Below, in pieces: positions 55,073 through 60,628 of a stretch of 64,000 nucleotides of DNA (the first letter of the stretch is position 1; every line of letters starts with the position of its first letter). Source of the stretch: Guillardia theta CCMP2712. Its lineage: Eukaryota > Protista > Cryptophyta. The position numbers and the translations under genes are program-made. The notes beneath the pieces are model-generated. The model was not told the DNA's origin. It was given only the letters and a program-made list of their open reading frames with translations, and did not search any database. The stretch covers positions 124,001 to 188,000 of the forward strand of contig NW_005434604.1 in NCBI RefSeq assembly GCF_000315625.1. The letters run 5' to 3'.

Positions 55073-56811
55073 ATGGCGATGCTAGTCATCGGACCCTTCC
55101 AGGTAGGGTGTGAAATGAGAGGAGGAAGGAAAGTGAGCATGAGAAAGTGAAGTGATTATGACTGCTCAACCTGATGGCATGTTGATTGTGTCCAAAAGCG
55201 CCGCAATGCCAGGCTGAGGGGTTGCGAGCGTCGTTACGCTGATTGTTGCGCCCCCTACATGGTGATCTGTTGGGGGTTGAATAATCGCGTGGGATGGTGA
55301 TAGAGTATGGTTGATTGATATTTCAAGCAAGTTCTATCAAAATCAAGTGCTTTCTGTGTATATATGCATAACGGATATTGGATCCATAAAGTTTTAGGCT
55401 GGCGCCATACTTTCTCATGACCGGATTTTCGGTACAGGTCCCGACCAAGCCTAATGGGGAGTGGGATCCTTGTGGCCTTGGGACGAGTGGCATTGTAACT
55501 AAAGCCTACAATAGCGCGGACTACTCTCCTGTTGCTCTGAAAGTGATTCCTGTCACTCTCCGTGATGAGGACAGGATGTCTGTGCTCCAGCAGCTCGTTG
55601 AACTGTGAGGTACTTCTCCCGCGCAACCAAGAGTGCTGACTCGCCGTCCTTGCAGTTACAGCTCCGCTCACCCGTCCGTTGTTGCATTTTTCGGAGCGGG
55701 TAAGATCGGACGACATCGTTGAGGTGCTCCTGATGCGACACTGCTGCAGATTATTTTCCAGACAGAAGTTCTATTATTATTGCAACGGAATTCATGGATC
55801 TCTATTCACTCAAGGACATCGTTTCTCGGACTGGGCCTATTCCTGAGCATGTGTGTGGCGCTAGGTGCCTGGTTGTGCTTTTGATGAACCTTGCCGTTAG
55901 GTTGCAGGATATGCTTGCGGATTTTTGTTGGAGGGTCTACGATATTTACATAAGGCAACTTCTTCCAGTGCAAGTTATCAGATGATGACGCTCCTTATGC
56001 AGGAAAGAAAGCTCATACATAGAGATATAAAACCTTCAAATATTCTGGTGAATAGCATGGGACAGGTGCGACAGATACACTCTACTGCTGCCCGTAGAGC
56101 CTCGTGTGCCAATCGGATTCTGACGACCTCCTACAGTTTAAAGTTTCAGACTTTGGGATGTCAACACAATTGAAAAATACTCTAGATCCTGCAAACACGT
56201 GGGTTGGATCAACAACTTACATGTCGCCGGAAAGGTAGAGCATTGCAGAAGCCCCAGACCAACATTGTAACGACGTGGGAGCAGAATAGCAGGATTACAA
56301 TATGTGTACAACAGCGATATCTGGAGTCTCTCTCTCTCCTTGGTGGAGTTGAGTACGGGGAAGTTTCCATATGATTGCTCGGGAGTTGCAAAGAGGATGG
56401 AGTTGATGTTTTTGCTGGACAGGTAGGGTCATGCCCGTGGTTCCCGATCTTTGAGTGACATCCTGCTTTCTAGGGTTGTGGATGATGATCCTCCTCGGTT
56501 GCCTGAGGGTCAATTTTCACCTGAATTTTGTAGTTTCATTGCGGCGTCGCTGGTGAAACGGTAAAATCTTGACTGCATCTGAGGACCAGCCTTGATGTAA
56601 GCACAGGGTTGAAGAGCGACCGAACGCAGAGCAGTTGCTCAATCATCCCTTCGTGGCTCGCTATGCGGGAGCTGACATCTCAGACTGGCTGGCAAACACT
56701 CTGGTTGGCTCCCTTCCCTTCTTTCCTCTTCCCTCGTCGCTCACACGAGGATTGCAGGACGTTATGCAGGTTCCGCCCAGTCAGTACCAACCTCAAGGAC
56801 GAGGGCACTGA
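55073..56811 (+). CDS. Mitogen-activated protein kinase kinase (STE7/MAP2K family), multi-exon
   Basis: [49 protein letters not shown], activation loop [24 protein letters not shown]. Confidence 0.92.
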
Positions 56812-57234
56812 ACGAAAGTTATTGATCATGCCAATCCAAGAGGAATGTAATTTGTTATTGAAAGCAAGCTGAACTTACCAGCTGACAATCTGCGATGGGA
56901 CGAGACCACTTTTATCCACTTCATTCGATTTTTAAGACACTTCAAGGATTTGTCGCCCTTGGAATAAACTTAATCAATCATTGCCAGTTGATACTGGACT
57001 GGAATTCTGCATGGAATGTCCTCCCGTGGTACTACAAAACACTCGACACTGTGCCATATTATTGTGATTCAGGAATTTAATATTCAGGGACCTTCCTCTG
57101 TTCATTCTGCTAATGACCCTCAAATCCCTCCAACCCAGACAGCGATGGCTGACATGATGGTTTACATGCTGACTACCTGAACACTCAGTCCAGCAGCCTG
57201 CGTCCCCTCGCCGAGTCCGAGTGGCATCCTTGCC

Positions 57235-58289
57235 TCACAGCTTGTTGTAGCTCCGGAGCACACTGATCAGGTTGTTGAACGTTGCTTCGCAACCAGGCCA
57301 TTCCCCTATGACGTCAGACGCTGCTCAACTTTGTTACTTACACGGCACGAAGGCTCGCAGCTACACTCGCCTCTGGTCCGGACATGCTCCAAGGAGGCGT
57401 CTCTTAGACCCTTCACCCCCTCCTCCATGGCATCAAGAGGAACCTTCATCTGCCGCGTCGGGGCAGTGAGGGGCAGGTTGAGGAAGAAGATGCGAGGAGA
57501 GAGAAGGTCTTCACCTCTCTATAAAGCTTTCCCATGATCTCGGATCCCTCGTCATCCGCGATGTTTGGGTTTCCTGCGAGGGTCCCATAGCTGACAAGCT
57601 GCTGACTTGTCATCAAGGATGGGGTGACACAACCTGTCTACCTTGAGGAACGTCGAGAAGTCCCTCCAGCATGCTTCTGCTCTGATGGGAGGATACAGGC
57701 CTCCCCCAGGCTCCGTGATCCCCGGAAACTTGTCATAAACTTTTTGCCTCGCCGCTCCTGCAAGTCCATGTGAGCTTGTAGACGCCCAAGATGGGAGCGG
57801 GTGGCGGACCGATGATCGCCACTTCGTTGTCTCTCAGGACCTTCATCATGCCTGCTCTTGAGGAAGAGAACCCCCCATCAGCAAGCTCGGAATCTGTAAC
57901 GAACCTCTGCAGCATCCATCACTTCCGACATTCAGTCTTACGCTTCTGTCTTCACATCGTTCTCGAAGGCCCTGGCACACGTTTCCCCTCCAACTCTTCC
58001 TGCATAGAGGAATGGTCAACACGAACAAGCGCACGCTCAGCATCCACTCGCCTTTGGCGAAGAAAGGCCTCTCCTTGAGCTGTGAAGCTAGCACTTTGGA
58101 CGCAGGGGAGAGCTGGCACTGCACGAGGCGGAGGGATCGGCATGGAGCACGAGGAGGAGAAGAGAGCCTGACAGGTTGGTGCAGCCATGCCGAACTTCCC
58201 ACAGGAGCACTGGAGACCTTGAGGGGGGGAGGTGCTAGAAACGCGTTCGCATGCGCCCAGCACAAGCTGAGGGTCACCAAGACTTTCAT
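57235..58289 (-). CDS. Nucleus-encoded plastid-targeted allophycocyanin-like (AplA-type) phycobiliprotein, 7 exons, ~242 aa precursor
   Basis: Exons 58289-58052, 57999-57956, 57906-57810, 57757-57642, 57598-57515, 57449-57371 and 57305-57235 sum to 729 nt in frame. They give ...ENDRFVTDSEL...LRDNEVAIIGAARQKVYDKFPGITEPGGGLYPPIRAEACWRDFSTFLKLVSYG...LYREMKVPLDAMEEGVKGLRDASL...FNNLISVL. Signal peptide ends ANA|FLAP. Confidence 0.88.
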
Positions 58290-58511
58290 GGCTTCGTAAC
58301 AAAGTCTCAGAGCAAATGCCAGCTCGCCTCATGAGAAGGAAAGAGGAGTGAAAAAGACAGAGCACTAAAGTGAACTTTCTACTATGTGAATTTCTCTTCT
58401 TTTGGGGCAGCGATTCCAGGATGACATGTGGATGACATGATGGAGTTTTATTACTATTCCCTTGGCGTCGAGTCCAACGACTGCAAGACGACCGACGGTA
58501 TCCTGCGAAAC

Positions 58512-60628
<2,117 letters not shown>

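What the first reader, a model, noticed from the sequence alone, without database searches (positions are those of the whole stretch)
57235..58289. Hidden nuclear gene for a plastid-targeted allophycocyanin-like (AplA-type) phycobiliprotein with an intact bilin-binding Cys
Seen: joining seven short exons gives an uninterrupted 242-aa protein that the ORF track misses. It has a signal peptide (ANA|F), an S/P/R-rich transit peptide, and then RFVTDSEL, FPGITEPGGGLYPPIRAEACWRDF (Cys codon 57669-57671), LVSYG, LYREMKVPLDAM and LRDASL. Established: PGG..Y...R..AC.RD is the phycobiliprotein chromophore site (Cys84 equivalent). The ACWRDF / VPLDAM variant is, from memory, typical of cyanobacterial allophycocyanin-like (AplA) proteins, which are not phycobilisome components. 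Globin-fold biliprotein genes are normally plastid-encoded in red-lineage algae. Cryptophytes lack phycobilisomes and allophycocyanin and keep their antenna in the thylakoid lumen. Inference: no twin-arginine or hydrophobic lumen signal is visible, so this may be a stromal biliprotein. It could act as a light sensor, bilin carrier/chaperone or photoprotective factor, i.e. a second biliprotein system in this alga. I cannot confirm whether it has been described.
Basis: partly seen in the sequence, partly recalled or inferred. Interest (0 to 1): 0.92.

Follow-up and report, generated by a model that had tools for sequence, protein, structure and literature searches.

The report
Nuclear AplA-type biliprotein gene, Guillardia
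This is a real, expressed, seven-exon nuclear gene of the cryptophyte alga Guillardia theta for a plastid-targeted allophycocyanin-like (AplA-type) pigment-binding protein, but a 2019 red-alga genome paper had already named the gene as a member of that family, and its function is still unknown.

Summary
Transcript contigs from two runs give a minus-strand gene of seven exons (ATG 58289, stop 57235-57237) encoding 247 aa. Two of the six introns are GC-AG.

The protein has a signal peptide ending ANA|F, an acid-free transit peptide, and a Pfam Phycobilisome domain. The Cys84-type site is R..ACWRD, with Cys156 at codon 57669-57671.

The genome is Guillardia theta CCMP2712. NCBI holds a 118-aa partial model, XP_005827057. 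Lee et al. 2019 (PMC6811547) already name that accession as one of the nuclear, plastid-targeted "PBS proteins" of Porphyridium-type red algae and cryptophytes, related to cyanobacterial APC-like proteins. The novelty claim therefore falls.

The AplA-type affinity is supported by a tree, by HMM scores (118 bits against Apl, at most 59 against canonical classes) and by Apl-specific motifs. No lumen-targeting signal is visible, so a stromal location is inferred.

New here:
- The full gene model.
- Cyanobacterial apl genes lie beside pebA-type reductase, CpeS-type lyase and HEAT lyase-like genes.
- apl co-occurs with phycoerythrin: 12 of 14 Apl genomes carry CpeB, against 3 of 137 without Apl.
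- This may explain why an alga that kept only phycoerythrin retained the gene.

Bilin binding and function are untested.

The parts
58052..58335 (-). Exon 1: 5'UTR 58335-58290 and start codon 58289-58287. It codes residues 1-79: signal peptide, transit peptide and the start of the mature protein.
   Evidence: Transcript contig X1 piece 58051-58335; translation.
58242..58289 (-). Signal peptide, residues 1-16, ending ANA with Phe at +1.
   Evidence: Sequence and hydropathy. Cryptophyte orthologues P0062 (..VQA|F) and P0223 (..SSA|F) have the same layout.
58116..58241 (-). Transit-peptide-like region, residues 17 to about 58. It is rich in P, S and L, with 5 basic and 0 acidic residues, no RR motif and no hydrophobic lumen-transfer domain.
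   Evidence: Homology to relatives starts at about residue 54-60.
58000..58051 (-). Intron 1, 52 nt, GC-AG (donor AG|GCGAGTG).
   Evidence: Joint in X1 and X10 with 3 ambiguous letters; boundaries.
57956..57999 (-). Exon 2, 44 nt, residues 80-94.
   Evidence: 43-nt piece between two joints.
57810..57906 (-). Exon 3, residues 95-126 (RFVTDSEL...), corresponding to the X/Y helix region of phycobiliproteins.
57642..57757 (-). Exon 4, residues 127-165: the chromophore-site exon, FPGITEPGGGLYPPIRAEACWRDF.
   Evidence: PF00502 at 38.2 bits, profile positions 49-85. Aligns to residues 55-90 of solved phycobiliproteins.
57669..57671 (-). Codon of Cys156, the Cys84-equivalent bilin attachment site. It is followed by W-R-D, the Arg86/Asp87 equivalents.
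   Evidence: Cys, Asp and the upstream Arg are invariant in 42 family members.
57515..57598 (-). Exon 5, residues 166-193 (LVSYG...LYRE). Its acceptor is the distal AG of a cagcag tandem.
   Evidence: PF00502 profile positions 86-113.
57371..57449 (-). Exon 6, residues 194-219 (MKVPLDAM...).
57321..57370 (-). Intron 6, 50 nt, GC-AG (donor AG|GCGAGTG). It is retained in the NCBI partial model.
   Evidence: P0001 reads through it.
57025..57320 (-). Exon 7: residues 220-247, stop TGA 57237-57235, and a 3'UTR of about 210 nt.

Best explanation
This is an expressed nuclear gene of Guillardia theta for an Apl-family (AplA-type, allophycocyanin-like) phycobiliprotein homologue.

Shown: it has a seven-exon structure, it is spliced in transcripts, it carries a PBP domain, it groups with the Apl clade, and its bilin-site residues are conserved.

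Inferred targeting: the signal peptide takes the precursor into the ER and periplastid route. The Phe-initiated transit peptide takes it into the plastid stroma. No further lumen signal exists, so the roughly 190-residue mature protein stays in the stroma, apart from the lumenal PE545 antenna.

Inferred action: it binds a bilin at Cys156, held by the Arg/Asp pair. In this alga that bilin is most likely phycoerythrobilin or 15,16-dihydrobiliverdin. The single S-type lyase GtCPES is the likely attachment enzyme. The protein works outside light harvesting, in the phycoerythrin/phycoerythrobilin pathway, as a bilin-sensing, buffering or hand-over protein. That role would explain why it was kept when the phycobilisome and allophycocyanin were lost.

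The lineage is cyanobacterial apl, then the red-algal nucleus, then the cryptophyte host nucleus.
For: Gene model and expression: (joints in X1 and X10, none in DNA run X12).

Domain: PF00502; aligns to PBP residues 55-90.

Identity: (G. theta CCMP2712, XP_005827057).

Family placement:
- Tree: canonical PBPs form one clade (support 99). The G. theta protein sits with three cryptophyte-type sequences (support 99) among Apl-like proteins.
- HMM scores: 118 bits against the cyanobacterial Apl profile, against 59, 47.5, 42.5 and 22 for the canonical classes.
- NCBIfam equivalogs are all far below cut-off.
- Shared N-terminal extension and the ACWRDF and VPLDAM motifs.

Site conservation: Cys, Asp and Arg are invariant in 42 sequences.

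Targeting.

Fold: the AF2 model of orthologue P0002 has pLDDT 94.7, and its best PDB matches are PBP chains.

Link to PE/PEB:
- Within 6 kb of 80 cyanobacterial apl loci: a HEAT lyase-like gene in 64, a CpeS-family lyase in 34 and a bilin reductase in 38. The one reductase tested is PebA.
- 12 of 14 Apl-bearing genomes carry CpeB, against 3 of 137 without Apl.
- G. theta has one CpeS gene and two FDBR loci.
- GtCPES attaches PEB to Cys82-type sites.

Literature: Lee et al. 2019 place this accession in the same family. Six et al. 2007 report aplA in the PE rod region of marine Synechococcus and, citing Montgomery et al. 2004, describe AplA as not linked to the phycobilisome.
Against: - No experiment here shows bilin binding, localisation or any phenotype.
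- Targeting was judged by inspection, not with a trained predictor.
- The PE association in cyanobacteria is not corrected for shared ancestry, and it has exceptions: 2 Apl genomes lack CpeB and 3 CpeB genomes lack Apl.
- PE-containing Eurhodophytina reportedly lack the gene.
- One cryptophyte orthologue (P0223) has C-E-K-D instead of C-W-R-D, so the pocket is not strictly fixed.
- The protein was not mentioned in the G. theta antenna proteome paper.
- The experimentally studied AplA sequence could not be fetched, so equivalence to it is inferred.
Confidence: 0.6

Rival explanations
1. It is an Apl-fold protein that no longer binds bilin in cryptophytes. It acts as an apo-protein, for example as a scaffold or chaperone for the plastid-made CpeB before export, or in an unrelated regulatory role.
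For: AplA reportedly lost the residues for alpha/beta contacts, and its function is unknown. Orthologue P0223 has an altered C-E-K-D pocket. A second G. theta paralogue has lost Cys, Arg and Asp altogether, which shows the fold can be kept without the site.
Against: Cys, Asp87-equivalent and Arg are invariant, and W and R are at least 90% conserved, across 42 members including this gene. The cyanobacterial genes sit next to bilin lyase and reductase genes.
Confidence: 0.15
2. It is a lumenal partner of the PE545 antenna, for example a low-energy terminal emitter or linker between PE545 and the photosystems, reaching the lumen by a cryptic signal or by hitch-hiking.
For: It is allophycocyanin-like, and canonical APC variants are terminal emitters (established knowledge). 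How PE545 couples to the membrane is an open question. Lee et al. guessed 'APC-related functions'.
Against: There is no RR motif and no hydrophobic transfer domain between residues 17 and 75; the maximum 13-residue hydropathy there is 0.77. The two cryptophyte orthologues also lack one. The family exists unchanged in cyanobacteria and red algae, which have stromal-side antennae. It is not mentioned in the antenna proteome study.
Confidence: 0.07
3. It is a decaying relic of the lost phycobilisome, transcribed but without function.
For: The NCBI model is partial, and Lee et al. say it is unclear whether the cryptophyte 'APC' is functional. An out-of-frame upstream AUG sits in the 5' leader.
Against: The 247-codon frame is intact across six correctly spliced introns. 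Transcript contigs occur in runs from at least five studies. Orthologues at 44-50% identity in other cryptophyte-type sequences keep the leader layout, the site and the motifs. It is not a canonical APC at all but a member of a separately conserved family.
Confidence: 0.06

Closest known systems
AplA of Fremyella diplosiphon and the cyanobacterial Apl ('phycobilisome protein', about 193 aa) family, including aplA of marine Synechococcus
   Same: - PF00502 fold.
- The roughly 30-residue N-terminal extension (LS..a..LI).
- LYP..RA.ACWRDF and VPLDAM motifs.
- The conserved Cys84-type site.
- A position outside all canonical alpha and beta clades.
   Different: It is nuclear, has six introns and carries a bipartite plastid leader. 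It is about 38-40% identical over the domain. FWHFLRCITYGIAG is replaced by FSTFLKLVSYGTLAG. The available bilins in this alga are PEB and DHBV. There is no gene neighbourhood of lyases or reductases. Direct comparison with the published AplA sequence was not possible, because paper PMC523187 is not held.
Nuclear-encoded plastid-targeted 'PBS protein' of Porphyridium purpureum (KAA8495026.1) and other Proteorhodophytina (Lee et al. 2019)
   Same: It is the same family; the paper lists this gene's accession as a member. It is nuclear, carries an N-terminal plastid leader and keeps the ACWRD site.
   Different: The red-algal proteins have a simple Phe-near-N-terminus transit peptide. The cryptophyte proteins add a signal peptide in front. 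Identity is about 36-40%. The cryptophyte sequences form their own well-supported clade.
Canonical allophycocyanin subunits (ApcA, ApcB, ApcD, ApcF)
   Same: They are the best-scoring canonical class. The globin-like fold and the Cys-x-Arg-Asp bilin site are shared.
   Different: Scores are 40-61 bits against equivalog cut-offs of 270 and 228. The protein lies outside the canonical clade and has the extra N-terminal helix. The Foldseek superposition has a high rmsd of about 9 Å despite TM 0.63-0.72.
Cryptophyte phycoerythrin PE545 beta subunit (plastid cpeB)
   Same: It is the only other globin-fold biliprotein known in this alga, with a Cys82/84-type site served by an S-type lyase.
   Different: CpeB is plastid-encoded, lumenal and part of the antenna. 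The present protein scores 36 bits against a cut-off of 275 for CpeB, is nuclear, and is predicted to be stromal.

Membership tests
Apl / AplA-type allophycocyanin-like phycobiliproteins | Phycobiliprotein globin-like domain (Pfam PF00502) | tested here: met
   Exon 4 alone scores 38.2 bits (cut-off 22.2) and exon 5 continues the profile. It is one of only two PF00502 loci in the nuclear assembly.
Apl / AplA-type allophycocyanin-like phycobiliproteins | Groups with Apl sequences and outside the canonical alpha and beta subunit clades | tested here: met
   In a tree of 76 rows, the 27 canonical PBPs fall on one side of a branch (SH-aLRT 99). The G. theta protein lies on the other side, with Apl-like proteins. 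This was a quick search, and the deeper branches are weak.
Apl / AplA-type allophycocyanin-like phycobiliproteins | Scores better against an Apl profile than against canonical profiles | tested here: met
   A profile built from 12 cyanobacterial Apl proteins only gives 118.3 bits. ApcA/D gives 58.9, ApcB/F 47.5, CpcB/CpeB 42.5 and CpcA/CpeA 22.3.
Apl / AplA-type allophycocyanin-like phycobiliproteins | Family-specific motifs: N-terminal extension helix, LYP..RA.ACWRDF, VPLDAM | tested here: met
   Alignments. Canonical subunits lack the extension and have C(L/I)RD(L/M).
Apl / AplA-type allophycocyanin-like phycobiliproteins | The sequence family used here is the same as the experimentally studied AplA | tested here: inconclusive
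   The AplA paper is not held. Indirect evidence: Tolypothrix tenuis PCC 7101 has a single non-canonical PF00502 gene, and it belongs to this family. The neighbourhood (pentapeptide protein, CpcG-like linker, PE genes) matches what Six et al. 2007 describe for aplA.
Apl / AplA-type allophycocyanin-like phycobiliproteins | Covalent bilin attachment and absence from the antenna complex | not testable with these tools
   This needs expression, Zn-blot or mass spectrometry, and fractionation.
Canonical allophycocyanin (ApcA/ApcB equivalogs) | Reaches the NCBIfam equivalog cut-off | tested here: not met
   The G. theta fragment P0001 scores 39.8 against 270 (ApcA) and 36.5 against 228 (ApcB). Full-length orthologue P0002 scores 60.7 and 48.
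Phycoerythrin beta (CpeB) | Reaches the NCBIfam equivalog cut-off | tested here: not met
   35.8 bits against a cut-off of 275.
Cryptophyte stroma-targeted nuclear proteins (bipartite leader) | Signal peptide followed by a transit peptide starting with Phe, and no thylakoid-transfer domain | tested here: met
   By inspection only: ANA|F, a basic acid-free 42-residue region, no RR and no hydrophobic stretch. Orthologues P0062 and P0223 show the same layout. No dedicated predictor was available.

The most novel reading that the evidence does not exclude
Apl-type proteins are a conserved, antenna-independent part of the phycoerythrin/phycoerythrobilin pathway. They would act as a bilin-loaded sensor or hand-over protein working with PebA/B and with S-type and HEAT-type lyases. 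The cryptophyte copy would be the stromal element that couples bilin supply and plastid CpeB maturation to the nuclear-encoded, lumen-directed alpha subunits. This would give the first function for a family left unexplained since 2004.
Probability: 0.2. Interest if true: 0.65.

Novelty: already known. Interest (0 to 1): 0.3.

Why it matters
Cryptophytes are usually described as having a single phycobiliprotein. A second, stromal, bilin-site-bearing globin-fold protein contradicts that picture, even though it has been noted in print.

Its retention after complete loss of the phycobilisome is natural evidence that Apl proteins do something other than light harvesting. The linkage of cyanobacterial apl genes to phycoerythrin and phycoerythrobilin genes gives a concrete, testable direction for a protein family whose role has been open for two decades.

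The corrected full-length model, with its targeting leader, is what any expression or localisation experiment needs.

Tried and rejected
- Searching the large protein database with the exon-1 ORF (region 1-79) found nothing. The full-length product is not in that collection or is withheld, so all work on the G. theta protein itself was done in scripts from window.fa. Orthologue P0002 stood in for folding.
- The AplA paper (PMC523187) is not held.
- Two literature searches on 'AplA' and 'phycobiliprotein-like' were uninformative.
- A second profile search with eukaryotic rows only gave no further organism names. The listing of cluster members named only Porphyridium, Rhodosorus and unnamed MMETSP transcripts. 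The protein atlas gave no taxonomy. The species range of the other 30-odd eukaryotic clusters therefore stays open.
- I briefly considered that some were green-algal, because they have Ala/Arg-rich leaders. I dropped that idea because 22 of 27 have Phe within the first 12 residues. From established knowledge, that is the red-algal and glaucophyte transit-peptide pattern.
- Raw RNA reads of X17 were too sparse over this gene to add to the contig evidence.
- A single-protein search for the apl-linked HEAT protein in G. theta found nothing, which proves nothing.
- Pfam found no CS/p23 domain in upstream ORF pieces of the paralogue.
- No complex prediction was run, because no binding claim is made.

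Full report
**1. What is in the sequence**

The feature is a gene on the minus strand. I laid two transcript-type assemblies, one DNA assembly and one raw RNA-seq run on 56800-58800. This gave six joints in the transcript contigs of X1 (one 1000-nt contig, depth 25) and X10 (730 nt, depth 235), and none in the DNA run X12.

The exons are 58335-58052, 57999-57956, 57906-57810, 57757-57642, 57598-57515, 57449-57371 and 57320-57025. Joined, they give exactly 1000 nt, with a 46-nt leader, a 744-nt CDS and a 210-nt 3'UTR.

Introns are 43-65 nt. Four are GT-AG. Introns 1 and 6 are GC-AG, with the same donor AG|GCGAGTG.

The product has 247 residues. This adds SDVIG and explains 242 against 247.

Runs holding about half of the sampled words, as expected for a spliced copy, come from at least five studies.

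**2. What the protein looks like**

- Residues 1-16 are a hydrophobic signal peptide ending ANA, followed by Phe.
- Residues 17 to about 58 are rich in Pro, Ser and Leu, with five basic and no acidic residues. There is no RR pair, and no stretch reaches a 13-residue hydropathy above 0.77.
- Homology to relatives begins at about residue 54-60 with LSPASKVLASQLKERPFF.
- Exon 4 alone reaches 38.2 bits on Pfam Phycobilisome (cut-off 22.2, profile positions 49-85), and exon 5 continues at positions 86-113.
- Against solved structures, exon 4 aligns to residues 55-90 of phycocyanin and allophycocyanin chains. That places Cys156 (codon 57671-57669) at the Cys84 position, with Arg and Asp at the 86 and 87 positions.

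**3. Whose gene it is, and whether it is annotated**

The assembly has 87,145,349 bases in 669 contigs.

A phmmer search of 1.84 billion representatives with exon 4 returned a 100%-identical 118-aa protein. Its records are EKX40077.1 / XP_005827057.1, 'hypothetical protein GUITHDRAFT_75898, partial [Guillardia theta CCMP2712]'.

That model covers exons 4-6 and then reads through the GC-AG intron 6. The gene is therefore only half hidden.

**4. The family**

The same search gave 60 hits at E <= 1e-3. Most are 200-300 aa, with the site at about residue 100-190, which means they carry N-terminal extensions.

Named members are:
- a nuclear Porphyridium purpureum protein (KAA8495026.1, on a 1.85-Mb contig);
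- Rhodosorus marinus and Porphyridium aerugineum transcripts;
- MMETSP transcripts.

The full-length G. theta protein is 47% identical over residues 54-245 to P0002, and 30-45% identical to the rest. Two cryptophyte-type full-length relatives have the same leader layout: signal peptide ending VQA|F or SSA|F, then a transit peptide, then LS(E/D)K....

A profile of 42 members found 564 proteins. The top of the list is about 193-aa cyanobacterial 'phycobilisome protein' from Nostoc, Tolypothrix tenuis PCC 7101, Trichodesmium, Crocosphaera and others. A scan of one genome per species confirmed 540 stretches encoding a relative.

The cyanobacterial proteins are very conserved, with LYP..RA(D/E)ACWRDFWHFLRCITYGIAG and LLYQELQVPLDAM. 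They carry a roughly 30-residue N-terminal extension that is absent from canonical subunits. The G. theta protein shares all three features.

**5. Membership tests**

- NCBIfam equivalogs for ApcA, ApcB, CpcA/B and CpeA/B are all hit, but far below their cut-offs: 40-61 bits against 225-279. The two APC models score highest.
- I took canonical subunits from two cyanobacterial genomes and labelled them by their N-terminal sequences, from my own knowledge of these families. In a maximum-likelihood tree of 76 rows these 27 canonical proteins form one side of a well-supported branch (99). The G. theta protein sits on the other side, in a supported group (99) with P0002, P0012 and P0032, among eukaryotic and cyanobacterial Apl-like proteins. 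The tree came from a quick search, and its deep branches are weak.
- A profile built from cyanobacterial Apl proteins only scores the G. theta protein at 118 bits. ApcA/D gives 59, ApcB/F 47.5, CpcB/CpeB 42.5 and CpcA/CpeA 22.
- In the 42-sequence alignment the Cys, the Asp three residues after it and the upstream Arg are invariant. The Trp and Arg between them are at least 90% conserved.
- An AlphaFold model of orthologue P0002 is confident (pLDDT 94.7). Its best matches in the PDB are phycobiliprotein chains at TM 0.63-0.72, at most 27% identity and about 9 Å rmsd. There is no closer solved structure.

That this family is the 'AplA' of the literature is inferred, not shown, because the 2004 paper is not held. 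Three indirect points support it. T. tenuis PCC 7101 has exactly one non-canonical PF00502 gene, and it belongs here. The gene neighbourhood matches the one described for aplA in marine Synechococcus. Lee et al. tie the eukaryotic proteins to cyanobacterial 'APC-like globin domains (cd12130)'.

**6. What was already known**

Lee et al. 2019 (Nat Commun 10:4823, PMC6811547) describe a nuclear-encoded, plastid-targeted PBS protein of P. purpureum that belongs to no existing family. It is present in other Proteorhodophytina and 'in some cryptophytes'.

[quoted passage not shown] They relate it to cyanobacterial APC-like proteins, and add that it is unclear whether the cryptophyte 'APC' is functional.

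No other paper in the library mentions the accession. The cryptophyte biliprotein literature still speaks of a single PBP type, and the antenna proteome paper does not mention this protein. The gene is known but neglected.

**7. A functional lead from cyanobacteria**

In the 80 best cyanobacterial loci, with 6-kb flanks, the apl gene is accompanied by:
- a HEAT-repeat PBS-lyase-like (NblB-like) gene, usually just upstream on the opposite strand, in 64 loci from at least nine orders;
- a CpeS-family lyase in 34;
- a ferredoxin-dependent bilin reductase in 38, usually as a pair;
- a pentapeptide-repeat protein in 34;
- a CpcG-like linker in 29.

The reductase in the Nostoc example is PebA by the NCBIfam cut-off: 378 bits against 263.

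In an even sample of 151 genomes of the phylum, 14 have a full-length Apl match, scoring 113-372 bits. Weaker matches of about 92-101 bits are canonical APC subunits. Fifteen genomes have a CpeB above its cut-off, and 12 have both. Fisher's exact p is 2e-13, or 4e-7 among genomes with a strong CpcB/CpeB-type match.

In several genomes apl and cpeB lie within 0.4-6 kb of each other. The test is not corrected for shared ancestry and has exceptions.

It agrees with Six et al. 2007, who found aplA in PE-containing marine Synechococcus. It also agrees with Lee et al.'s report that the PE-less Cyanidiophytina lack the gene.

G. theta kept only a PE-type beta subunit with PEB and DHBV. It has one CpeS-family gene and two bilin-reductase loci in the nucleus. 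GtCPES attaches PEB to Cys82-type sites.

**8. How it most likely works**

Shown: the gene, its splicing, the fold family, the conserved site and the leader layout.

Inferred from established cryptophyte targeting rules: a signal peptide plus a Phe-initiated transit peptide leads to the stroma, and lumenal PE alpha subunits need an extra twin-arginine domain. On that basis the mature protein stays in the stroma.

Inferred from site conservation and gene neighbourhood: it binds a PEB-type bilin at Cys156, probably via GtCPES, and serves the PE/PEB pathway rather than light harvesting.

The rivals are an apo-protein role, a lumenal antenna partner and a decaying relic. Each is given in the report with its evidence and odds.

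**9. Verdict**

The AplA-type and stromal readings are supported. The possible novelty is refuted by a 2019 paper that names this accession. The function remains unknown.

Noticed in passing
G000 contig C11:233372-233656 (+), locus L002 about 1380-2056: The only other PF00502 locus in the assembly is a multi-exon paralogue. In it the bilin site reads AFWEE instead of ACWRD, so Cys, Arg and Asp are all replaced. Its intron positions differ from those of this gene, and a coiled-coil-like region lies upstream. It is a long, unplaced branch outside the canonical clade. RNA-type runs hold about 0.52-0.54 of its words against 0.77-0.93 in DNA runs, which is consistent with a spliced transcript. Another first-stage note (s1-430478) calls it a CS/p23 fusion; Pfam did not confirm a CS domain on the upstream ORF pieces I tried.
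   Followed up: partly
window 58000-58051 and 57321-57370 (minus strand): Two of the six introns are GC-AG, with identical donors AG|GCGAGTG. The NCBI partial model fails at the second one.
   Followed up: partly
window 58330-58332 (minus strand), mRNA position 4: An out-of-frame AUG lies 43 nt upstream of the start codon, 3 nt from the end of the transcript contig. It opens a 108-codon ORF overlapping the leader. Whether most transcripts include it is unknown.
   Followed up: partly
window 57599-57604 (minus strand): There is a tandem cagcag acceptor at intron 4. The transcript contigs use the distal AG, giving ...FLK|LVSYG.
   Followed up: yes
window 58140-58407: In the raw stranded RNA run X17, a few reads lie with the first mate on the + strand. 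This is opposite to the direction seen for the minus-strand neighbour gene. It may be a low-level antisense or divergent transcript over the 5' end.
   Followed up: no
window 58429-58800 and beyond (minus strand): The upstream neighbour is a well-expressed minus-strand gene with two 46-nt GT-AG introns (58546-58591, 58647-58692). Its transcript contig ends only about 93 bp from this gene's 5' end.
   Followed up: no
loci L007-L086 (cyanobacterial apl loci); genomes G001-G151: apl genes sit beside HEAT lyase-like, CpeS-type lyase, pebA-type reductase, pentapeptide-repeat and CpcG-like linker genes. They co-occur with cpeB: 12 of 14 Apl genomes carry it, against 3 of 137 without Apl.
   Followed up: yes
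proteins P0009-P0057; loci L003-L006: About 30 further clusters (at 50% identity) of eukaryote-type homologues come from unlabelled runs. Some are uninterrupted (intron-free) ORFs on 5-94-kb contigs; the three contigs I fetched also carry eukaryote-type genes (a cyclin, a WD40-repeat protein, a metacaspase). Of 27, 22 have Phe within the first 12 residues, as in red-algal transit peptides. The family may be wider among red algae than the few genera named in 2019.
   Followed up: partly
protein P0223 (cryptophyte-type MMETSP transcript): This orthologue keeps the Cys but reads R-K-E-H-C-E-K-D instead of R-A-E-A-C-W-R-D, so the pocket varies within cryptophytes.
   Followed up: no
protein P0027 (cyanobacterial, 261 aa, five members on 4.7-Mb genomes): This Apl variant has a roughly 75-residue coiled-coil-like N-terminal addition.
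   Followed up: no
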